The position numbers and the translations under genes were made by a program. Below, piece by piece: positions 1 through 32,036 of a stretch of 64,000 nucleotides of DNA. The notes beneath the pieces are model-generated. The model was not told the DNA's origin. It did not search any database and worked only from the letters and a program-made list of their open reading frames with translations. Every line of letters starts with the position of its first letter. The first letter of the stretch is position 1. The stretch covers positions 62,001 to 126,000 of IMG/VR virus record IMGVR_UViG_3300008110_010000; one strand, 5' to 3'.

Positions 1-460
1 CCTCAAATGGAAACTTATAATCAAACGAATTTTTAGTAACTGCAACATTCAAATAATGCAAAGCTCTTAATAAAGCTAATAATCCATTTCCCGAACCCTC
101 GACTTCCAAAACTGTGGAATTATTGAACGGAATCTTGACGGAACCGGTTTCTGTCATTGTGTATTTTTTGCCATCAGCAGTTATTGTTAAATAATCCATT
201 CCTGCTTTGACTTTTTTCCCGCTCGTTACACTCTCGAATTTTTTTGCAGCCCCTATCTTTATCATCTCTTCTACTCCGCTTATTTTAAGCGAGGTTGTGG
301 TATCCTGTTGAATACCTATAGGATTTGCAGCTCCCGCAAAAAGATTGTCAGTGTCTGTGGATCCTATAACGGCTATAAAACCTTTATCTGTTCCTTCCTG
401 CTCTAAGATTGCATAGCTGTTTCTTTTTAAGAATTGATCGAACGTTTCTAGTATTTTCAT
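1..460 (-). CDS. Hypothetical protein, 3'-truncated by window edge; N-terminus MKILETFDQFLKRNSYAILE
   Basis: ATG at 460-458 on the minus strand, open to the window start; preceded by GATATATA; not in the ORF track. Confidence 0.75.
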   Translation of the reverse strand, partial: MKILETFDQFLKRNSYAILEQEGTDKGFIAVIGSTDTDNLFAGAANPIGIQQDTTTSLKISGVEEMIKIGAAKKFESVTSGKKVKAGMDYLTITADGKKYTMTETGSVKIPFNNSTVLEVEGSGNGLLALLRALHYLNVAVTKNSFDYKFPFE

Positions 461-461
461 A

Positions 462-475
462 AAGATATATATCTT
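462..475. promoter_or_regulatory. Palindromic bidirectional putative late promoter AAGATATATATCTT
   Basis: Perfect palindrome giving GATATATA on both strands, between divergent starts at 460 and 492. Confidence 0.6.
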
Positions 476-491
476 GTAAATATTCGTTTAT

Positions 492-1286
492 ATGAGAAAA
501 ATACAGTCATTTTCACAATTTGTCAGCGAAGCTCAATTTGCTATAAGTGATCCCTCAACAGCAGGAGAGAAATTAGCAGGTGTCCTAGTAGCTAATAAAG
601 ACGCAAAAGAAGAACCAAAGGGAAGTAATAAAGGACCGGAAGTAGACAAATATCTACAATCAGTAGGATTAGGCCCAGGTTTACCCTGGTGTGCAGCCTT
701 TGTTTATTATATTTTTGACCAGCTTTCCAAGCAACTTGGAACTTCAAACCCACTTCCTAAGACTGGAGGGGTAATGAATCACTGGAATAAATCAGACCAG
801 GATGCAAAGATTACCATAGATCAAGCTAGGATCAATCCAAATTTAGTTAGGCCAGGACAAGTATTTATAATGACCAGACCAGGTAAAGGATTGGGACATA
901 CTGGTATAATAGTATCAGTAGATCCACAAAAGAAAACCATGACAACTATGGAGGGTAACACCAACGATCAGCTTTCTGGTGAAGGTAACAGAGTCGGAAC
1001 TAATGTGAGAAAATTGGATCAAGGAACCCTAGTAGGATTCTTGGATTATTTTAAAACAAGTAGAACACCAGAATTTGAAGCAGATCTTTCTAAAGCAATA
1101 ACAGGTCAAGCCACAGCATTACCTCCTCTTTCAGCTGACGATGTTCCAGGAGACGATGTAGTAGGTCCGGTTAAAACCGATGCTGGAGGACAATTAATGG
1201 CTCAAGCTCTTGGTAATGTTGCAGCGGCAACTGCAAATATGGAAGCTCCTAGAACACCAGAAGAAGTTCCGGTGGAACTTAGATAA
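492..1286 (+). CDS. CHAP-domain peptidoglycan amidase/peptidase
   Basis: PWCAAFV (catalytic Cys), GHTGI (His) and EGNT motifs. Confidence 0.8.
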   Translation: MRKIQSFSQFVSEAQFAISDPSTAGEKLAGVLVANKDAKEEPKGSNKGPEVDKYLQSVGLGPGLPWCAAFVYYIFDQLSKQLGTSNPLPKTGGVMNHWNKSDQDAKITIDQARINPNLVRPGQVFIMTRPGKGLGHTGIIVSVDPQKKTMTTMEGNTNDQLSGEGNRVGTNVRKLDQGTLVGFLDYFKTSRTPEFEADLSKAITGQATALPPLSADDVPGDDVVGPVKTDAGGQLMAQALGNVAAATANMEAPRTPEEVPVELR

Positions 1287-1321
1287 ATAGATTATTAAAT
1301 ACAAAAATATAATAAGTAGAT

Positions 1322-1618
1322 ATGAAACATCTTAAAGGATATAACGAAATAAGCGAAAGTTTTTTCGATTTTAATTTTGGAAGGCCTACCGCTACAAAGG
1401 CAGCTAAAGACAGTCTAAGAGGAACTGGGGTTTCTGGATATTCAAGGGGAGATCAAAATTACGGAGAAGCTCCAGATCCTAAGAAAGAGGTAGTAATTTT
1501 TCAAGGAAGGGAATTCACGCAGGATCAAATAGAATATGCTGGTTATAACGATCTTGGAGAAATTCCAAGAATTGAAGGAGATAAATTAATTATTGCAAAT
1601 CCTGTTTGGGAAATGTAA
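1322..1618 (+). CDS. Hypothetical protein with capsid-targeting-like N-terminus
   Basis: ORF; begins MKHLKGYNEISES. Confidence 0.65.
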   Translation: MKHLKGYNEISESFFDFNFGRPTATKAAKDSLRGTGVSGYSRGDQNYGEAPDPKKEVVIFQGREFTQDQIEYAGYNDLGEIPRIEGDKLIIANPVWEM

Positions 1619-1638
1619 TTTTTTTCTTAAATTTACAC

Positions 1639-1667
1639 GAAACAAAAAATAACGTTTGATATATAAC
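1639..1667 (+). promoter_or_regulatory. Putative promoter of the tRNA leader (GAAAC-N18-TATAAC overlapping GATATATA)
   Basis: Matches two motif classes that recur across the window. Confidence 0.6.
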
Positions 1668-1676
1668 AAACATCTC

Positions 1677-1760
1677 ATGAAGACTCAGTTCACATATAAT
1701 TGCAACCAAATGCCTGAACAAGGTAATAAGGGGGATTATATGGATACGGATCTGGGTTAA
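1677..1760 (+). CDS. Putative attenuator leader peptide MKTQFTYNCNQMPEQGNKGDYMDTDLG (27 aa)
   Basis: ATG..TAA directly after the promoter; 3' end overlaps the antiterminator strand; enriched in amino acids of the downstream tRNAs. Confidence 0.7.
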   Translation: MKTQFTYNCNQMPEQGNKGDYMDTDLG

Positions 1761-1794
1761 CATGTCTAAAATATAAATTGAAAAACCCAGATCC
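1748..1794 (+). promoter_or_regulatory. Antiterminator helix GGATCTGGGTT / AACCCAGATCC
   Basis: Perfect 11-bp complementarity between 1748-1758 and 1784-1794, the terminator 5' arm. Confidence 0.7.
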
Positions 1795-1816
1795 AAAAGG
1801 TCTGGGTTTTTCTTTT
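1781..1816 (+). terminator. Intrinsic terminator immediately upstream of the tRNA array
   Basis: AAAAACCCAGATC-CAAAA-GGTCTGGGTTTTT hairpin with U-tract TTTTTCTTTT. Confidence 0.8.
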
Positions 1817-1819
1817 GAT

Positions 1820-1891
1820 GGCGATTTGGCCGAGTGGTTCAGGCAGGGGTCTGCAAAACCTCTTACTCCAGTTCGACTCTGGAAATCGCCT
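1820..1891 (+). tRNA. tRNA-Cys(GCA)
   Basis: Acceptor GGCGATT/AATCGCC, anticodon loop CTGCAAA, GTTCGA T-loop. Confidence 0.92.
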
Positions 1892-1899
1892 CAGAAATT

Positions 1900-1971
1900 G
1901 GGGATATAGCTCAGCGGTAGAGCAAGCGACTGTTAATCGCTAGGTCATAGGTTCGAATCCTTTTATCCCCG
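1900..1971 (+). tRNA. tRNA-Asn(GTT)
   Basis: Acceptor GGGGATA/TATCCCC, anticodon loop CTGTTAA. Confidence 0.92.
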
Positions 1972-1977
1972 CAGATG

Positions 1978-1993
1978 GTTCTTTGACATATTG
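1978..1993 (+). promoter_or_regulatory. boxA-like antitermination element GTTCTTTGACATATTG
   Basis: Resembles rrn boxA (E. coli TGCTCTTTAACA); lies in a tRNA spacer. Confidence 0.5.
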
Positions 1994-2001
1994 GAAAACT
2001 T

Positions 2002-2073
2002 GGCCCCGTCGTCTAATGGTTAGGACGCCTCCCTTTCACGGAGGAAATTTCGGTTCGACTCCGTGCGGGGCTA
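2002..2073 (+). tRNA. tRNA-Glu(TTC)
   Basis: Acceptor GGCCCCG/CGGGGCT, anticodon arm CCTCC-CTTTCAC-GGAGG. Confidence 0.9.
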
Positions 2074-2081
2074 CATTCGAG

Positions 2082-2154
2082 GATCTCTTAGCTCAATCGG
2101 TAGAGCACTACACTTTTAATGTAGGGGTTTTGGGTTCGAGTCCCAAAGGGATCA
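2082..2154 (+). tRNA. tRNA-Lys(TTT)
   Basis: Acceptor GATCTCT/AGGGATC, anticodon arm CTACA-CTTTTAA-TGTAG. Confidence 0.92.
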
Positions 2155-2243
2155 CATAATACCTTATTATAAGCTCATAGCTGAACTCTAATTTTTAATC
2201 AGATTTAGATACTATAAGCTAAAATAATCTCTTTAAACAAAGC

Positions 2244-2325
2244 GGGAGCATCGCATAGCGGCAATTGCAAGGGACTGTAAATCCCTCCTCTTACGAGTTC
2301 GGTGGTTCGAGTCCACCTGCTCCCA
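2244..2325 (+). tRNA. tRNA-Tyr(GTA)
   Basis: Acceptor GGGAGCA/TGCTCCC, anticodon arm AGGGA-CTGTAAA-TCCCT, long variable arm. Confidence 0.92.
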
Positions 2326-2326
2326 C

Positions 2327-2406
2327 AAATCAGAAGCGGTAAGAAGCGTTACTTCATCAAAATTGGATTTGACAACAACACACGCTGATTAAATATTCTC
2401 TGATTT
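2327..2406 (+). ncRNA. Candidate structured small RNA in the Tyr-Gln spacer
   Basis: Closing helix AAATCAGA/TCTGATTT with inner helices AGCGT/ACGCT and TCAAA/TTTGA. Confidence 0.35.
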
Positions 2407-2409
2407 TAT

Positions 2410-2480
2410 TGCCCGATGGTGTAATGGCAGCACAAGTGGTTTTGGTCCACTTAGTCTAGGTTCGAATCCTAGTCGGGCAT
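2410..2480 (+). tRNA. tRNA-Gln(TTG)
   Basis: Acceptor TGCCCGA/TCGGGCA, anticodon arm AGTGG-TTTTGGT-CCACT. Confidence 0.92.
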
Positions 2481-2485
2481 CATTA

Positions 2486-3142
2486 TTACCAATAATAGGA
2501 TTCCCATTTAAATTTTTCAATCGGAGTAAATACTGGTTCTTTTGTTCCGTATGATGCACGCTTCTCCACATCATCTTTAGGATTTTGAAGAATTTGGAGT
2601 GCATAATCTACAATTCTGGGTCCATGAGGTAAAACGTGAGTAACTTTATATCGGGATGCAAATTCTTTCACCCTGTTTATTATTTCAGGTAATATCTCAT
2701 AGTATTTTTCACTGTATCTTGATCCCCATGTTCTTTCAATTTTAAGATAATTTTCTGAATCCCATGATGCTCCGGGGGCGTAAACCTTTATAGGGGAGAA
2801 TTGATAAACAGTATCTATATACATAGGATGATAATAGGAGATAAGACACTCAAGTTCTTCCAGCTTATTTCCTATGAACCCCTTTATATTTTTTTCCGCA
2901 TGTTCTGCTCTTTTGATCTCGTCATTATTTAAGGTGAATCCCCCCCTCCACCCAAGATAACATGCATCAATTAATTTGGACTGATTTCTCTCGCTGAAAA
3001 GTTCCTCTATCTTTTCCTCGTTATAAATTGGCCCAGTTATTACTGTTCTATTATGGAGGATTTTTTTAAATTCCATCCCGAATAGATCTCTTCCTTTCTG
3101 AGAGATACCATAAAAACTCTCGTAAATTGTTAGATGTCTCAC
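2486..3142 (-). CDS. Hypothetical protein inserted antisense within the tRNA array
   Basis: 218-aa ORF, GTG start, AATATATA upstream, begins MRHLTIYESF. Confidence 0.65.
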   Translation of the reverse strand: MRHLTIYESFYGISQKGRDLFGMEFKKILHNRTVITGPIYNEEKIEELFSERNQSKLIDACYLGWRGGFTLNNDEIKRAEHAEKNIKGFIGNKLEELECLISYYHPMYIDTVYQFSPIKVYAPGASWDSENYLKIERTWGSRYSEKYYEILPEIINRVKEFASRYKVTHVLPHGPRIVDYALQILQNPKDDVEKRASYGTKEPVFTPIEKFKWESYYW

Positions 3143-3158
3143 AAATCTATATATTCCG

Positions 3159-3192
3159 CATTTTTTATTAATAATCCTCTTTATTAAATTTG
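3159..3192 (+). promoter_or_regulatory. Class I putative early promoter CATTTTTTAT...TAAATTTG
   Basis: Bacteroidota-type -7 element TAnnTTTG with CATTTTT starting 26 nt upstream; same geometry at five other sites. Confidence 0.55.
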
Positions 3193-3215
3193 GGATAGAT
3201 AGGAAACACTTTTAT

Positions 3216-3710
3216 ATGAAAACGAAAAAAATATTAGTGCTAATTTTTCTTTTTTTAATTCCAGCTTGGGAATTTCAAAAAGAACCAGATTTTAAATTCT
3301 TCAAAATAATTCCGGAGGAGGTAGAAAAAATTTCTCATCAAAATCTTTATAATGAAATTATTGAAAGCGGAATAAAATTCCCCGAAATAGCTTTCGTACA
3401 GGCAATTATAGAATCCGGGAATTTTACATCCGGGCTTTTTAAAAAGCATAACAATCTTTTTGGAATGAGATTTCCAGGAAGGAGAGAAACAACTTCTATA
3501 GGTAGAAACAAAAGGGGATATGCAAGATACGAAGATTGGGACGATAGCGTAAAGGATTATTTTCATTGGCAATCCTTTTTTATGAGAAGGAGAGACATCA
3601 ACACCAAAGAAGAGTATCTAGATCTTTTAGATGATGTGTATGCTGAAGATAAATCTTATGTTACTGTTATTAGAAAGAATATAAAGCAATACAAACACAT
3701 TTTTGATTAA
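3216..3710 (+). CDS. GH73 glucosaminidase (FlgJ-like peptidoglycan hydrolase) with N-terminal signal/anchor
   Basis: QAIIESG, NNLFGM, YARY..W.DSVKDY and YAED..Y motifs. Confidence 0.8.
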   Translation: MKTKKILVLIFLFLIPAWEFQKEPDFKFFKIIPEEVEKISHQNLYNEIIESGIKFPEIAFVQAIIESGNFTSGLFKKHNNLFGMRFPGRRETTSIGRNKRGYARYEDWDDSVKDYFHWQSFFMRRRDINTKEEYLDLLDDVYAEDKSYVTVIRKNIKQYKHIFD

Positions 3711-3711
3711 T

Positions 3712-3785
3712 GGACCGGTAGTTCAGCTGGTTAGAATGCCGCCCTGTCACGGCGGAGGTCGCGGGTTCGAGTCCCGTCCGGTCCG
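3712..3785 (+). tRNA. tRNA-Asp(GTC)
   Basis: Acceptor GGACCGG/CCGGTCC, anticodon arm CCGCC-CTGTCAC-GGCGG. Confidence 0.95.
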
Positions 3786-3790
3786 CAAAT

Positions 3791-3830
3791 GGTCAAAATT
3801 TGAGTAGTAAAACGGTCAAAATTTGAGTAG
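3791..3830. repeat. 17-bp direct repeat GGTCAAAATTTGAGTAG x2
   Basis: Identical copies at 3791-3807 and 3814-3830. Confidence 0.85.
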
Positions 3831-3883
3831 CAAATAATTACTAGGAACTTTTAAAATTTTTTAGCATATAATTTCGGATACTA

Positions 3884-3956
3884 GCAGCGGTGGTGTTCAA
3901 TGGTAGCACGCCAGCCTTCCAAGCTGGACGAGAGGGTTCGAATCCCTTTCGCTGCT
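3884..3956 (+). tRNA. tRNA-Gly(TCC)
   Basis: Acceptor GCAGCGG/TCGCTGC, anticodon arm CCAGC-CTTCCAA-GCTGG. Confidence 0.92.
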
Positions 3957-3962
3957 CAATAT

Positions 3963-4002
3963 AATAAACCAGATTCTGTCTAATAATCACATCTGGTTTA
4001 TT
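3963..4002. repeat. 12-bp inverted repeat between the two tRNA-Gly genes
   Basis: AATAAACCAGAT ... ATCTGGTTTATT. Confidence 0.7.
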
Positions 4003-4023
4003 TAGTAAAAACAGGTTTAGTAA

Positions 4024-4096
<73 letters not shown>

Positions 4097-4131
4097 CAAA
4101 ATATAAAAACAAGTATTTTTATAAATAGAAC

Positions 4132-5220
4132 ATGACTGATTATCTAATAGTTGGAGCTGGACTTTACGGATCTATTGTTGCAAACGAATTAAAAAAATCA
4201 GGTAAGTCAGTTATTGTAATAGATCAGAGAGATCATATTGGAGGAAACTGTTTCACACAAAGCATAGATGGTATTAATGTTCATAAATATGGGCCCCATA
4301 TATTTCACACAGATAATCTAAGTGTTTGGAATTACATTCAAAAATTCTGCGATTTTAATCATTTTAGCTACAGACCAAGGGTTAACTATAAAGGAAAAAT
4401 ATATTCCTTTCCGATCAACTTACTAACTTTTCAACAAGTATATGGTATCAGTTCTCCTGCTGAAGTCCAGAAATTACTGGAAGAGATAAGGATTTTTCAC
4501 GAGGATCCAAAAAACATGGAAGAATGGATGCTAGATCAAATTGGACCAGATCTTTATAAAATTTTTATAGAAGGGTATACTACAAAACAGTGGGGAAGAT
4601 CTCCGAAGGAACTTCCTGCTTCCATAGTAAAAAGAATTCCAATACGTCTAACTTTTGATGATAATTACTATAATCATCCATACCAAGGAATCCCAGTTGG
4701 CGGGTACACACAGATTTTTGAAAAACTTCTTAATGGTATAGACGTCAGATTAAATCACAATTATTTTGATAATAAAGAATTTTTTGACTCTCTAGCAAAG
4801 AATGTAATTTACACCGGTCCGATAGACAGATTCTATAATTATGAATTTGGAAAATTAGAATATAGATCCTTAGATTTTAAAACAGAACTTTTAGATATTC
4901 CGGATTTTCAGGGGGTAGCTGGGGTTAATTATACAGATTTAGATGTACCATATACAAGAATAGTAGAACACAAACATTTTGAATTTGGAAAACAAAACCA
5001 CACGATCATCACAAAAGAATATTCAAAATCGTTAGGTGATCCCTACTATCCAATAAATGACGGAAGAAATCAAAAGATTTATGAAGTGTATAGATCCAAG
5101 TCCGTGGAAAATCCGAAGTTTAATTTTGGCGGAAGATTAGCAGAGTATAAGTATTATGACATGCATCAAATAATCTCGCAAGCCCTTGATTTCTCTTCGA
5201 AAATTAGAATCAAAAATTAA
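4132..5220 (+). CDS. glf: UDP-galactopyranose mutase
   Basis: GAGLYG FAD motif, HIGGNC, YGPHIFHT, YTTKQW, YYP, GRLAEYKYYDMH. Confidence 0.93.
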   Translation: MTDYLIVGAGLYGSIVANELKKSGKSVIVIDQRDHIGGNCFTQSIDGINVHKYGPHIFHTDNLSVWNYIQKFCDFNHFSYRPRVNYKGKIYSFPINLLTFQQVYGISSPAEVQKLLEEIRIFHEDPKNMEEWMLDQIGPDLYKIFIEGYTTKQWGRSPKELPASIVKRIPIRLTFDDNYYNHPYQGIPVGGYTQIFEKLLNGIDVRLNHNYFDNKEFFDSLAKNVIYTGPIDRFYNYEFGKLEYRSLDFKTELLDIPDFQGVAGVNYTDLDVPYTRIVEHKHFEFGKQNHTIITKEYSKSLGDPYYPINDGRNQKIYEVYRSKSVENPKFNFGGRLAEYKYYDMHQIISQALDFSSKIRIKN

Positions 5221-5822
5221 TTTTTGTGATCCTTGTCTTCGCAAAGCATTTCTAATTGTTCCCAGCTAAATTTTGGCTTTTCATTTAAAAAAACAAAGCA
5301 TCTCCACTTTTTTTGAGACTCAAAGTAGATATGCTTTTGTAGGTGGGAGGGAATGGCAGCATTTGTCTCAACTCTTTTAACGGGATTGTCAAAAAATATT
5401 TTAATTAATACAGTGATATTTTCTTTATCGTCCCATTTTCTGATCTGCTCCTCCAATAATCTCCATTCACCCCTATTCAGATACTGATTTTGCATAATGC
5501 AATTAAGGTAAGAAAATGTTTGCTTTAGGTTTTCCATGTTGTCAGAAAATGTAGCAGCAGGTGCTCCATGTCCTTTATCATACACATTTTTTACATAATC
5601 ATCAGCATCCGAAGTTTTGACTGATTTTTCTGTGTAAAAATCCATTGATCCCCTATTAACATTAGTAGGTCTGTTGGTTGATCTATATTTGATCCATAAA
5701 GGCTGCTCTAATTTCTGCGAATATAAAACTTCAAACACTTGATTTTTAATTCTTACTGTGTCTTGGGCTTTTAATACTACTGATAGTGATAAAAATAGAA
5801 GTACTGATAAAATTCTTTTCAT
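5217..5822 (-). CDS. DNA/RNA non-specific endonuclease (NucA/EndA-like) with signal peptide
   Basis: DKGHGAPA His-Me finger motif, LNRGEWRLLEE, hydrophobic N-terminus. Confidence 0.8.
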   Translation of the reverse strand: MKRILSVLLFLSLSVVLKAQDTVRIKNQVFEVLYSQKLEQPLWIKYRSTNRPTNVNRGSMDFYTEKSVKTSDADDYVKNVYDKGHGAPAATFSDNMENLKQTFSYLNCIMQNQYLNRGEWRLLEEQIRKWDDKENITVLIKIFFDNPVKRVETNAAIPSHLQKHIYFESQKKWRCFVFLNEKPKFSWEQLEMLCEDKDHKN

Positions 5823-5824
5823 GT

Positions 5825-6643
5825 TTATTTTTTTCTTTTTAACTCTTTCATCGGAACATTTACATGTTTACCGAACGGCATTTGTTTACTGCTTATCATT
5901 GCCCAAATAATTTTTTTGTGCCATTTTGGTTTTTCAGGGTCGTGAGCACCACCGTCAGTAAAGTATATGAGGCAGGCAAGATCTTTTCCTTTTTTTAGAA
6001 TGTTATCTTCTGCCCATTTTATAGGCGGGTCAAATCCAAGTTCGTTACCACCCGTAGATCCCTGTTTAGAAGGATCTAATTTTTGAGTTGGGTATTTTAA
6101 ATAATCTATACCATCTATGTCATCACTGCAATAGATTATCCAAATTTCTTCAGGAGAAAAAGCTTTAAGTATACTTCTAGCTTCTGTCAAGAAAGTATTA
6201 TATTCTTCGGATCCTATACTTCCGGAGGTATCAACTGCAATTACAACTGATCCAAATCCCTCTTCCTTTCCTCTTAGACCAGGAAGGTAAATGCCTTGAC
6301 TAGCATATCTTCTGTTTGGTATTTTATACATTGTAGGTTCCTCGTTGGCAGTCGAAACGTATCTTTGTAATATTTTTCTCCAATTAATCTGTGGATTAGC
6401 TAATCTTTCAACGAATTTTCTAAGAGCCCCTGATCCTCCTCCACTGCCCATTCCTCTGTTTGCAGCATTGTTTACTATTTCTTTTACCTTGTCTTTTACA
6501 GATTTTCTTTCCTTCTGTATTGGTTTTTCTTTCTGTGGATTCCAATCCCCCTTCTCTTGATCTGGCTTATCTGGATCCCCATCTTTCCATTCGCTTTCTT
6601 TTTCGTCAGAAATGATTTTGTATTTTCCTTTTTGTACGTACAT
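5825..6643 (-). CDS. VWA-like domain protein (DUF2201 C-terminal part)
   Basis: INWRKIL, PNRRY, AVDTSGSI (MIDAS), YFTDG. Confidence 0.8.
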   Translation of the reverse strand: MYVQKGKYKIISDEKESEWKDGDPDKPDQEKGDWNPQKEKPIQKERKSVKDKVKEIVNNAANRGMGSGGGSGALRKFVERLANPQINWRKILQRYVSTANEEPTMYKIPNRRYASQGIYLPGLRGKEEGFGSVVIAVDTSGSIGSEEYNTFLTEARSILKAFSPEEIWIIYCSDDIDGIDYLKYPTQKLDPSKQGSTGGNELGFDPPIKWAEDNILKKGKDLACLIYFTDGGAHDPEKPKWHKKIIWAMISSKQMPFGKHVNVPMKELKRKK

Positions 6644-31463: not shown

Positions 31464-32036
31464 ATGGCAGGATTACCACATTATACGTCTTCGAAAGCAG
31501 CAGTAAACAAATTTGAACCGATCTATACGAATCAGTTTGAAGTTGTTATTACTCCACCTGCTTCCGTAGTTCCCCCTCAGGGAAATCCTAATAATGGCAA
31601 CATTCTTTTAGAGCACGTAAAAAGTGTAGAAGGATTGGGTGTTGATCAGAATCCAGGAGAAATAGCTCAGCAATATAAAAATGCTAAGAGATATTACTCC
31701 GGGGCAAAACCTAGCCAAACTGGATTTGATCTAACGATCAACTTTGAGGTAAACCTAGACGAAAATAATTCAATGTACGTTTTTAAAACAATGAGACAGT
31801 GGGCGGATTTAATTTACAATCCACTTACGGGAGCTCAGGGTTTGAAAAGAGATTATACTGGTACCATAGTAATTAGTGCATTTAATAAGGCAGGTGACGT
31901 TTTTAGAAGAATCACATGTAAAGACTGCTTTCTTATGGCAAGTTTAACACCTATGGATCTTAACTACACTAACACTCAGATATTTAGTTTGAGAGCTCAG
32001 TGGGCAGTAGATTACTTTGATGACGTATTTTTATAA
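31464..32036 (+). CDS. Tail tube protein (gp19-like), copy 1
   Basis: NQFEV, W.DLIYNPLTG, DY motifs; follows sheath. Confidence 0.8.
   Translation: MAGLPHYTSSKAAVNKFEPIYTNQFEVVITPPASVVPPQGNPNNGNILLEHVKSVEGLGVDQNPGEIAQQYKNAKRYYSGAKPSQTGFDLTINFEVNLDENNSMYVFKTMRQWADLIYNPLTGAQGLKRDYTGTIVISAFNKAGDVFRRITCKDCFLMASLTPMDLNYTNTQIFSLRAQWAVDYFDDVFL

What the first reader, a model, noticed from the sequence alone, without database searches (positions are those of the whole stretch)
1639..1820. Candidate translation-sensing attenuator that gates a phage tRNA array
Seen: a promoter (1639-1667) is followed by a 27-codon ORF (1677-1760, MKTQFTYNCNQMPEQGNKGDYMDTDLG), then an intrinsic terminator (1781-1816), then tRNA-Cys at 1820. 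The last leader codons and the first base of the stop (GGATCTGGGTT, 1748-1758) are an 11/11 complement of the terminator 5' arm (AACCCAGATCC, 1784-1794), so the two helices are mutually exclusive. 18 of the 26 non-initiator codons encode Cys, Asn, Glu, Lys, Tyr, Gln, Asp or Gly, and all eight amino acids served by the downstream tRNAs are present (13 of 15 in YNCNQMPEQGNKGDY). Known: this is the logic of trp/his attenuation. Inference: a ribosome reaching the stop masks the antiterminator and transcription ends, whereas stalling caused by tRNA depletion or cleavage allows read-through. The phage would then supply replacement tRNAs on demand, a possible inducible counter to anticodon-nuclease defences. 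I do not know of a described multi-tRNA attenuator of this kind in a phage.
Basis: partly seen in the sequence, partly recalled or inferred. Interest (0 to 1): 0.93.

Follow-up and report, generated by a model that had tools for sequence, protein, structure and literature searches.

The report
Leader-peptide attenuator gating phage tRNA genes
A short translated leader just before a phage tRNA gene cluster is rich in the codons those tRNAs read and can switch a transcription terminator on or off, and dozens of unrelated phages have the same arrangement, so phages appear to measure decoding speed to control their own tRNA supply.

Summary
The sequence holds a 27-codon ORF (1677-1760) and a strong hairpin plus T-run (1780-1816) that ends 4 nt before tRNA-Cys. 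An 11/11 complement of the terminator's 5' arm overlaps the leader's stop codon (0 of 10,000 shuffles match its duplex energy).

I sampled phage contigs with patterns that ignore the leader and found 48 distinct small ORFs (40 families) in the same position. Their residues match their own downstream tRNAs (mean z 2.1-2.4 against 0.0-0.26 for permuted arrays; 0 of 20,000 permutations reach this). The matching codons peak 12-24 nt upstream of an antiterminator and fall to baseline inside it.

The window's own phage has a paralogous second leader, 5 kb upstream. It is rich in Ser, Thr, Leu, Arg, His and Pro, and its array is Ser-Thr-Ser-Leu-Arg-His-Pro-Ser (reciprocal Fisher P 0.0017).

Five diverged homologues keep the ORF, the stop and all three helices. 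Seven literature searches found no prior description.

This is classical ribosome-mediated attenuation applied to tRNA genes with a composite multi-codon sensor. The anticodon-nuclease counter-defence idea is untested, and nothing here is experimental.

The parts
1628..1635 (+). Candidate promoter -7 box, TAAATTTA (Bacteroidota type TAnnTTTG with the last G replaced by A). Transcription would start about 1642-1646.
   Evidence: The box is exact (TAAATTTG or TATATTTG) at the aligned position in L211, L219 and L223, and in the paralogous leader at L007 361-368. An exact TAnnTTTG lies within 90 nt upstream of the leader ATG in 19 of 40 leader families, against 2.0 expected. No sigma-70 match exists at 1639-1667.
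1677..1760 (+). Leader ORF: 27 codons plus TAA.
   Evidence: ORF length, frame and stop position are kept in five diverged metagenome homologues despite many substitutions in codons 10-25. The MK(T) start is typical of the class: K or R at position 2 in 23 of 40 families against a frequency of 0.29 in long ORFs.
1695..1739 (+). Sensor zone, codons 7-21 (YNCNQMPEQGNKGDY). A ribosome stalled here leaves the antiterminator free.
   Evidence: 13 of 15 residues are in the set served by the downstream tRNAs. Stall map: antiterminator pairing probability is at least 0.89 with the A site at codons up to 20, then 0.62 at 21, 0.11 at 22 and 0 from 23 to the stop. Class-wide, matching codons peak 12-24 nt upstream of the antiterminator.
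1676..1764 (+). Large leader hairpin (regions 1:2, anti-antiterminator). 1682-1703 pairs with 1732-1758, and CAUG of the start codon pairs with CAUG at 1761-1764.
   Evidence: -24.9 kcal/mol. 184 of 186 pair cells are kept in six homologues, with two fully compensated double changes at 1703-1732 and 1712-1724.
1748..1758 (+). Antiterminator strand (3' part of region 2), GGATCTGGGTT. It covers the last three codons and the first base of the stop.
   Evidence: 11/11 complement of 1784-1794. Hairpin -17.6 kcal/mol. 0 of 10,000 shuffles reach the duplex energy. 64 of 66 pair cells are kept in six homologues, and changes in the partner arm stay compatible through G-U pairs.
1759..1779 (+). Spacer between the stop codon and the terminator (loop of the antiterminator hairpin). 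It is almost invariant in all six homologues. Its role is unknown; an RNA polymerase pause site is one possibility.
   Evidence: Alignment A2: 1750-1778 is invariant, while codons 10-25 just upstream vary.
1780..1816 (+). Intrinsic terminator. The 5' arm includes region 3 (1784-1794), the 3' arm is region 4 (1799-1812), and the T-run extends to 1816.
   Evidence: 14 pairs, 6 G-C, T-run. -19.6 kcal/mol. 82 of 84 pair cells are kept, with one compensated A-U to G-C change at 1789-1803 in L220. No room is left for a promoter before tRNA-Cys.
1820..2481 (+). Gated tRNA array: Cys(GCA), Asn(GUU), Glu(UUC), Lys(UUU), Tyr(GUA), Gln(UUG).
   Evidence: ARAGORN and Rfam tRNA hits.
3712..4097 (+). tRNA-Asp, Gly(UCC) and Gly(GCC). 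These amino acids occur in the leader, but the tRNAs are probably a separate transcription unit.
   Evidence: They are separated from tRNA-Gln by a minus-strand gene (2486-3142) and a plus-strand gene (3216-3710) preceded by an exact TAAATTTG at 3185.

Best explanation
This is a ribosome-mediated transcription attenuator that controls a six-tRNA operon of a roughly 219-kb phage whose promoters look Bacteroidota-type.

Proposed sequence of events:
1. Transcription starts just after the -7 box at 1628-1635.
2. A ribosome loads on the 27-codon leader while RNA polymerase moves towards the terminator.
3. If the ribosome reads the leader quickly, it reaches the last codons and the stop. There it covers 1748-1758, so 1784-1794 is free to pair with 1799-1808. 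The terminator forms and transcription ends in the U-run, 4 nt before tRNA-Cys.
4. If decoding of Tyr, Asn, Cys, Gln, Glu, Lys (and Gly, Asp) codons in codons 7-21 is slow, the ribosome stalls upstream. Then 1748-1758 pairs with 1784-1794, the terminator cannot form, and the tRNA genes are transcribed.

The products of the array are the tRNAs that speed up reading of the leader. The circuit is therefore a negative-feedback regulator of phage tRNA supply. It would also switch on whenever the host's pool of those tRNAs is low, cleaved or uncharged.

Shown in silico: all sequence parts, mutual exclusivity of the helices, their conservation, the class-wide match between leader and array, and the position of the matching codons.

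Inferred: that the leader is translated, that polymerase and ribosome are coupled, that the hairpin terminates, and what the physiological signal is.
For: 1. Anatomy and energies.

2. Five diverged homologues of this element (L211, L219, L220, L221, L223) keep the ORF, the stop and the three helices. Pair cells kept are 82/84, 64/66 and 184/186, with compensated changes.

3. The same phage carries a paralogue 5.1 kb upstream of the window (L007: ORF 408-500, hairpin about 527-563, tRNA-Ser at 596).
- It shares the promoter box, antiterminator core and terminator with the window element, but its sensor codons are rewritten.
- 17 of its 29 residues are Ser, Thr, Leu, Arg, His or Pro, and its array is Ser-Thr-Ser-Leu-Arg-His-Pro-Ser.
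- The reciprocal 2x2 table is [[17, 8], [5, 18]], Fisher P 0.0017.
- It folds at -62 kcal/mol, z -9.5.

4. Class-level evidence comes from leader-blind sampling, which gave 48 distinct small ORFs in 40 families.
- Own-array z is 2.1-2.4 against 0.0-0.26 (sd 0.19) for permuted arrays, and 0 of 20,000 permutations reach it.
- Within genomes that carry several leaders, own z is 3.28 against -0.76 for the other arrays, P 2e-4.
- Complementarity of the terminator 5' arm to the leader's end has mean z -2.7, with 60% of loci at P below 0.05. Hairpins before tRNAs that lack a small ORF give -0.63 and 15%.
- Matching codons reach 76-78% against 26% expected at 12-24 nt upstream of the antiterminator, and fall to baseline at and after it.
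- Codon choice fits the array's anticodons in split codon families: 44 of 79 against 34.5 expected, P 0.007.

5. Single-amino-acid cases look like textbook attenuators.
- L039: a TTA-TTA-CTA run before tRNA-Leu(UAG) and tRNA-Leu(UAA), with a 9/9 antiterminator overlapping the stop.
- L111: five Cys codons (excluding the initiator) before tRNA-Cys.
- L203: Ser and Gln codons of all six cognate classes before four tRNA-Ser and two tRNA-Gln.
Against: - There is no experimental datum of any kind.
- For this locus alone the composition signal is modest (P 0.003-0.005). It rests partly on Asp and Gly, whose tRNAs are probably outside the gated unit. With the six proximal tRNAs only, the count is 12 of 20 in codons 2-21 (P 0.0035).
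- At equilibrium the terminator always wins, so the model depends on kinetics and on polymerase pausing, neither of which can be computed here.
- In the nascent RNA without a ribosome, the antiterminator is predicted to form (P 0.98). The role of the 1:2 hairpin is therefore unclear.
- The -7 box of the window copy has a mismatch.
- Transcription-translation coupling is not established for the host group.
- The host itself is inferred only from the promoter type.
Confidence: 0.8

Rival explanations
1. The architecture is the same attenuator, but its selected role is an inducible counter-defence. When a host anticodon nuclease or other tRNA-depleting defence removes Lys, Tyr, Asn, Asp, Glu or Gln tRNAs, ribosomes stall in the leader and the phage switches on replacement tRNAs.
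For: The circuit would respond to tRNA loss by construction. From general knowledge, the window array is rich in species that known anticodon nucleases target (Lys, Tyr, Asn, Asp, Glu, Gln).
Against: Leaders of the class cover every kind of tRNA, including Ser, Leu, Val, Cys, Pro and Trp. That fits general supply control better than defence against particular nucleases. No defence or anti-defence gene was linked to the element, and nothing was tested.
Confidence: 0.2
2. The same attenuator reads amino-acid starvation (uncharged tRNA), as in biosynthetic operons, rather than tRNA abundance. It ties tRNA synthesis to the host's nutritional state.
For: Stalling cannot distinguish missing tRNA from uncharged tRNA. 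Classical attenuators respond to charging (established knowledge).
Against: Making more tRNA does not relieve starvation, so the output would not correct the signal. Codon choice follows the array's isoacceptors, not only the amino acids (and L203). That points to sensing at the level of the tRNA.
Confidence: 0.15
3. This is an ordinary small protein gene with its own leaky terminator or 3'-stabilising hairpin. The tRNAs are made by constitutive read-through and processing, and the complementarity and composition are incidental.
For: Terminators of long genes do abut tRNAs in some phages (L042 and L068). The stop-to-hairpin spacing of about 20 nt is also usual for ordinary genes. For this single locus the composition P is only about 0.005.
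Against: It does not explain the class-wide and within-genome match of leader to array. It does not explain the position-specific enrichment just upstream of the antiterminator. It does not explain the excess complementarity compared with hairpins that lack a small ORF. Nor does it explain the two paralogous leaders in this phage having swapped compositions.
Confidence: 0.05
4. Leader and array both merely reflect the phage's genome-wide codon or amino-acid bias.
For: From general knowledge, phage tRNA sets tend to match phage codon usage.
Against: In four genomes with two or three leaders, each leader matches its own array and is depleted for the other arrays of the same genome (own z 3.28 against -0.76, P 2e-4). 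Baselines taken from long ORFs of the same loci were already used.
Confidence: 0.02

Closest known systems
Leader-peptide (ribosome-mediated) transcription attenuators of amino-acid biosynthetic operons: trp, his, leu, thr, ilv, pheA
   Same: A short translated leader with regulatory codons, mutually exclusive antiterminator and terminator helices, an upstream 1:2 helix, and a stop codon placed so that a terminating ribosome masks the antiterminator. Control is kinetic, with the terminator slightly more stable than the antiterminator.
   Different: The regulated genes are tRNAs, not enzymes. The sensor is a composite of six to eight amino acids rather than a run of one or two. The output feeds back on decoding speed itself. 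The element is in a phage. There is no sequence homology: the best Rfam match is Thr_leader at 31.3 bits, against a threshold of 55.
pheST (phenylalanyl-tRNA synthetase) and hisS leader-peptide attenuators
   Same: Attenuation by a leader peptide applied to a gene of the translation apparatus, responding to the state of a particular tRNA. The hisS case is described in PMC2965389.
   Different: Those regulate synthetases and sense one amino acid. Here the tRNA genes themselves are gated, and several tRNA species are sensed at once.
T-box riboswitches
   Same: A terminator/antiterminator switch that reports on tRNA status.
   Different: A T-box binds uncharged tRNA directly, has no leader ORF, and regulates synthetase or amino-acid genes. 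No T-box match was found by Rfam in 1-6000.
Stalling-dependent leaders of resistance genes (ermC, cat, msrD)
   Same: A ribosome stalled in a short leader ORF rearranges the downstream RNA structure.
   Different: There the stall is caused by a drug and a specific nascent peptide, and it mostly controls translation. There is no match between leader codons and the regulated product.

Membership tests
Ribosome-mediated (leader-peptide) transcription attenuator | Short ORF with a start codon between the promoter and the regulated genes, and translated | tested here: inconclusive
   The ORF is present and kept in frame and length in five diverged homologues. The class shows a K/R-rich second codon. 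A related family shows 5 synonymous against 2 non-synonymous changes, counted by eye between the L037 and L075 sequences printed. Translation itself cannot be shown with these tools.
Ribosome-mediated (leader-peptide) transcription attenuator | Leader enriched in codons that correspond to the regulated function | tested here: met
   18 of 26 residues, P 0.005. In codons 2-21, 15 of 20, P 0.003. The class-wide permutation gives a Z of about 10.
Ribosome-mediated (leader-peptide) transcription attenuator | Intrinsic terminator between the leader and the regulated genes | tested here: met
   1780-1816: 14 pairs, a T-run, -19.6 kcal/mol, with a compensated change in L220.
Ribosome-mediated (leader-peptide) transcription attenuator | Antiterminator helix mutually exclusive with the terminator | tested here: met
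   1748-1758 pairs with 1784-1794: 11 bp, -17.6 kcal/mol, and 0 of 10,000 shuffles reach the duplex energy.
Ribosome-mediated (leader-peptide) transcription attenuator | Geometry: a stall at regulatory codons frees the antiterminator, and a ribosome at the stop masks it | tested here: met
   The class-wide peak of matching codons lies 12-24 nt upstream of the antiterminator, with baseline values within it.
Ribosome-mediated (leader-peptide) transcription attenuator | Read-through changes with ribosome stalling in vivo | not testable with these tools
   Needs reporter fusions, 3'-end mapping and ribosome profiling.
Ribosome-mediated (leader-peptide) transcription attenuator | The regulated genes are amino-acid biosynthesis or synthetase genes (all described members) | tested here: not met
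   The regulated genes are six tRNAs. I therefore file this as a new variant of the mechanism, not as a member of any described leader family.
Rfam Thr_leader (RF00506) and other curated leader families | Score at or above the family's gathering threshold | tested here: not met
   31.3 bits against 55, E 0.006, at 1732-1816. The match reflects a similar hairpin layout only.
T-box riboswitch | Specifier loop and T-box sequence recognised by the Rfam model | tested here: not met
   No T-box hit in 1-6000 at E up to 1.

The most novel reading that the evidence does not exclude
Phage tRNA arrays, and a few bacterial tRNA genes, may commonly be gated by an undescribed class of leader-peptide attenuators whose leader 'spells out' the amino acids, and partly the codons, of the tRNAs behind it. 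This would give closed-loop control of tRNA supply by measured decoding speed. Such a circuit would also act as a built-in alarm for host tRNA depletion or cleavage. The window element and its paralogue 5 kb upstream would be two members in one jumbo phage.
Probability: 0.7. Interest if true: 0.92.

Novelty: new variant of a known kind. Interest (0 to 1): 0.88.

Why it matters
How and why phages carry tRNA genes is an old question, and almost nothing is known about how those genes are regulated. If this reading holds, the phage measures how fast specific codons are decoded and makes the matching tRNAs only when decoding is slow.

That gives a direct, testable link between phage tRNA content, codon demand and host tRNA status, including tRNA-targeting defences.

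It also extends leader-peptide attenuation in three ways: to a new kind of target (RNA genes of the translation apparatus), to composite multi-codon sensors, and to phages whose promoters suggest Bacteroidota hosts, where such attenuators are little documented.

There are practical consequences too. Many small ORFs next to tRNA arrays could be annotated as leaders, and each leader predicts which tRNAs belong to one transcription unit.

Tried and rejected
- Synteny through the flanking proteins (492-1286, 1322-1618, 2486-3142, 3216-3710) found only identical copies of the same phage, or relatives at 38-64% identity without tRNAs next to them. The five identical IMG/VR copies carry no variation in the leader.
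- GenBank phages contain no relative of the region. Only tRNAs match.
- Rfam has no family at threshold other than tRNA.
- The sigma-70 promoter proposed at 1639-1667 is not found.
- The window-wide count of TAnnTTTG is not above shuffles (66 against 76, sd 9). The host cannot be inferred from that count; only the positional enrichment before leaders is informative.
- Equilibrium folding with a masked ribosome footprint on the full transcript always gives the terminator. It cannot discriminate between states, so the nascent-transcript version was used instead.
- Bacteroides phage crAss001 has a large tRNA region but no such leader-terminator arrangement. The element is therefore not universal among Bacteroidota phages.
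- Searches for a cultured relative of two other leader families found only uncultured 634-642-kb phages.
- Seven full-text literature searches and one paper check found no description of leader-peptide attenuators before tRNA genes.

Full report
**1. What is in the sequence**

The window holds nine tRNA genes on the plus strand. Cys, Asn, Glu, Lys, Tyr and Gln lie at 1820-2481. Asp, Gly and Gly lie at 3712-4097.

- A hairpin of 14 pairs (six G-C) at 1780-1812 is followed by a T-run to 1816. It is the best terminator-like site in the first 6 kb. It ends four bases before tRNA-Cys, so no promoter fits between them.
- The eleven bases 1748-1758 are the exact complement of 1784-1794, the 5' arm of the terminator.
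- Folded alone, the terminator is -19.6 kcal/mol. The alternative hairpin 1748-1758 with 1784-1794 is -17.6. A larger hairpin, 1676-1764, encloses most of the ORF and is -24.9.
- The duplex between the arm and the 72 nt upstream scores -19.8 kcal/mol. Shuffles give mean -6.4, sd 2.05, and 0 of 10,000 reach it.

**2. Diverged copies of this element**

IMG/VR holds five contigs of the same phage, the longest 219 kb, and they are identical through the leader. A metagenome scan for a terminator tail followed by this type of tRNA-Cys gave five diverged homologues: L211, L219, L220, L221 and L223.

- All keep a 27-codon ORF with the stop at the same base.
- Codons 1-9, the block 1733-1741, and everything from 1750 to 1778 are invariant.
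- Codons 10-25 vary. The replacements are mostly Lys, Asn, Glu, Gly and Asp, plus Met where the array has gained a tRNA-Met.

Counting pairs on the alignment gave the following:

| Helix | Pair cells kept | Notable changes |
|---|---|---|
| Terminator | 82 of 84 | One compensated A-U to G-C change |
| Antiterminator | 64 of 66 | Two changes in the shared arm remain compatible as G-U |
| 1:2 hairpin | 184 of 186 | Two compensated double changes |

In L223 the homology begins at a promoter box and the upstream context is different. The unit 'promoter, leader, switch, tRNAs' therefore moves as a block.

The box is an exact TAnnTTTG, the Bacteroidota -7 motif, in L211, L219 and L223. The window has TAAATTTA at 1628-1635.

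**3. A paralogue in the same phage**

A second element lies 5.1 kb upstream of the window start (L007).

- It has an exact TATATTTG box, a 30-codon ORF (L007 408-500), a hairpin and T-run (about 527-563), and then tRNA-Ser at 596.
- The array that follows is Ser, Thr, Ser, Leu, Arg, His, Pro, Ser.
- Aligned with the window element, it shares the promoter box, the ATCTGGG antiterminator core, part of the spacer and the CCCAGATC...GGTCTGGG terminator. The middle of the ORF is different.
- It folds at -62 kcal/mol, z -9.5, with the same layout.

| Leader | Residues in {Ser, Thr, Leu, Arg, His, Pro} | Residues in the window array's set |
|---|---|---|
| Paralogue (L007), 29 residues | 17 | 8 |
| Window leader, 26 residues | 5 | 18 |

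Fisher P is 0.0017. The two copies keep the switch, and each has sensor codons rewritten to suit its own array.

**4. A class, found without looking at leaders**

I collected phage tRNA loci in two ways:
- with a tRNA-Cys pattern (49 loci);

A fixed procedure was then applied:
- ARAGORN tRNA calls;
- a hairpin of at least 9 pairs plus a T-run within 35 nt of a tRNA;
- an ATG ORF of 12-70 codons ending 10-35 nt before the hairpin.

This gave 48 distinct ORFs in 40 families. Examples:

| Locus | Leader feature | Downstream tRNAs |
|---|---|---|
| L039 | TTA-TTA-CTA run; 9/9 antiterminator overlapping the stop, the same geometry as the window | Leu(UAG), Leu(UAA) |
| L111 | Five Cys codons (excluding the initiator) | Cys |
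| L114, L185 | KYYYGKKSYKK | Tyr and Lys tRNAs |
| L169 | PQPQQHPQ | Pro, His, Pro, His, Gln |
| L188 | FLLLLS | Leu, Leu, Ser, Tyr, Trp |
| L088 | Three different leaders in one phage | Each matches its own array |

A GC-rich 410-kb contig (L203) has a Shine-Dalgarno-preceded leader. Its Ser and Gln codons cover all six cognate classes of the four tRNA-Ser and two tRNA-Gln that follow.

**5. Statistics**

- **Leader against own array.** One representative per family was scored against the amino-acid set of its own array. Mean z is 2.1-2.4 under three definitions of the array and two backgrounds. Permuted arrays give 0.0-0.26 (sd 0.19), and none of 20,000 permutations reaches the observed value.
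- **Within genomes.** In genomes with several leaders, own-array z is 3.28 and other-array z is -0.76 (P 2e-4). This excludes genome-wide codon bias as the cause.
- **Antiterminator complementarity.** The terminator 5' arm is complementary to the leader's 3' part well beyond shuffles (mean z -2.7; 60% of loci at P below 0.05). The 26 hairpins before tRNAs that lack a small ORF show almost none of this (mean z -0.63; 15%).
- **Position of matching codons.** They are enriched 2.3-2.5-fold at codons 7-18 and not at all in the last nine codons. Relative to the antiterminator they peak at 76-78% (26% expected) 12-24 nt upstream, and drop to baseline at and beyond it. That distance is what a ribosome footprint predicts if a stalled ribosome must leave the antiterminator free.
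- **Codon choice.** For Leu, Arg, Ser and Gly, codon choice fits the array's anticodons more often than the phage's own codon usage predicts (44 of 79 against 34.5, P 0.007).
- **Promoters.** Half of the leaders have an exact TAnnTTTG 26-60 nt upstream (19 of 40, 2.0 expected).
- **Start context.** Position 2 is Lys or Arg in 23 of 40, against a frequency of 0.29 in long ORFs.
- **Cellular genomes.** The same generic pattern there gave 21 hairpins before tRNAs and only three small-ORF candidates. Two of the three look real: CCCPCC before tRNA-Cys in an Acidobacteriota MAG (L295), and a Phe/Met-rich leader before tRNA-Phe and tRNA-Met (L283). The arrangement is therefore much commoner in phages (48 of 74 hairpins against 3 of 21), but not exclusive to them.

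**6. Mechanism for the window element**

I masked a 30-nt footprint at each codon and folded the nascent RNA up to 1797, that is, before the terminator's 3' arm exists. The probability that the antiterminator is paired was:

| Ribosome A site at | Antiterminator pairing probability |
|---|---|
| Codons up to 20 | at least 0.89 |
| Codon 21 | 0.62 |
| Codon 22 | 0.11 |
| Codon 23 to the stop | 0 |

The enriched stretch, codons 7-21, is the stretch where a stall allows the antiterminator to form. A ribosome that reaches the end hides it, and the terminator forms.

As in the trp and his leaders, the terminator is the more stable helix and always wins at equilibrium. The decision must therefore be kinetic.

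The array's products speed up reading of the leader, so the simplest reading is negative feedback on tRNA supply. The same circuit would respond to any loss of those tRNAs. Whether that is used against anticodon nucleases is not addressed by any result here.

**7. Limits**

- Nothing is experimental.
- For this locus alone the composition signal is moderate.
- Asp and Gly codons count towards the signal, although their tRNAs lie behind a minus-strand gene and a gene with its own exact -7 box at 3185. Using only the six proximal tRNAs, codons 2-21 still give 12 of 20 (P 0.0035).
- The role of the 1:2 hairpin is unclear, because the antiterminator is predicted to form in nascent RNA even without a ribosome.
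- The host is inferred only from the promoter type.

**8. Comparison and novelty**

The mechanism is that of classical leader-peptide attenuation, and every sequence-level defining feature I could test is met. The described families all regulate biosynthetic or synthetase genes, and no curated RNA family matches (Thr_leader 31.3 bits against 55, no T-box).

Seven full-text searches and a check of a genome-wide attenuator survey found no report of leader-peptide attenuators in front of tRNA genes, in phages or in bacteria.

I therefore rate it a new variant of a known kind. It is supported here as a whole class rather than as a single oddity.

A cultured candidate for bench work exists in Cellulophaga phage phi10:1. 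There, an unannotated 21-codon ORF with Trp, Tyr and Phe codons and a hairpin plus T-run directly precede tRNA-Tyr and tRNA-Phe. That single case is statistically weak (P 0.04).

Noticed in passing
L007 408-596 (same phage, about 5.1 kb upstream of window position 1): A second, paralogous leader-attenuator before the array Ser-Thr-Ser-Leu-Arg-His-Pro-Ser. It folds at -62 kcal/mol, z -9.5. The single tRNA-Met, tRNA-Leu and tRNA-Arg genes lying between the two arrays show no such hairpin.
   Followed up: yes
window 3787-3835: A tandem direct repeat of about 22 nt (GGTCAAAATTTGAGTAG...) lies between tRNA-Asp and tRNA-Gly. A similar doubled motif lies between tRNA-Glu and tRNA-Cys in L053. Each copy contains AAAATTTG, which resembles a -7 promoter box, so these could be tandem promoters.
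   Followed up: no
window 3185-3192 and 3216-3712: An exact TAAATTTG box precedes the 164-aa gene, whose stop codon is one base from tRNA-Asp. The Asp-Gly-Gly tRNAs are probably co-transcribed with that protein gene rather than from the leader.
   Followed up: partly
window 1759-1778: The 20-nt spacer between the leader's stop and the terminator is invariant in six homologues, although the coding stretch just upstream varies. The reason is unknown; a polymerase pause site or a binding site are possibilities.
   Followed up: partly
L037 about 3180-3315; also L072, L073, L075, L080, L081, L082: A conserved element of about 130 nt lies directly upstream of tRNA-Cys in several phages, in place of a leader. 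It contains a strong CCCCACTGACGAGTGGGG hairpin. No Rfam family matches it at threshold.
   Followed up: partly
L055 about 3100-3258; L057 about 4358-4520 (minus strand); L066 about 3840-3983: Another conserved element of about 150 nt lies directly upstream of tRNA-Phe. No Rfam family matches it at threshold.
   Followed up: partly
L295 (Acidobacteriota MAG) near 5333; L283 near 1066; L203 (410-kb GC-rich contig, minus strand): The same architecture occurs outside AT-rich phages. There is a CCCPCC leader before tRNA-Cys and a Phe/Met-rich leader before tRNA-Phe and tRNA-Met. A Ser/Gln leader with a Shine-Dalgarno site precedes four tRNA-Ser and two tRNA-Gln and has one codon class per anticodon.
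   Followed up: partly
L344 1149-1280 (Cellulophaga phage phi10:1, KC821618 about 31467-31598): A cultured phage carries an unannotated 21-codon ORF rich in Trp, Tyr and Phe, followed by a hairpin and T-run, before tRNA-Tyr and tRNA-Phe. Between the two tRNAs lies a tRNA-Trp-like remnant that ARAGORN does not call.
   Followed up: partly
window 2369-2397: A good sigma-70-type match (TTGACA, 17 nt, AATATT) lies just before tRNA-Gln inside the array. Its relevance is doubtful if the host uses Bacteroidota-type promoters.
   Followed up: no
L088 (three leaders) and GenBank LR745206, LR756502, LR756504: The closest GenBank relatives of the phage carrying three separate leader-attenuators are uncultured phages of 634-642 kb. 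The class therefore reaches into the largest known phage genomes.
   Followed up: no
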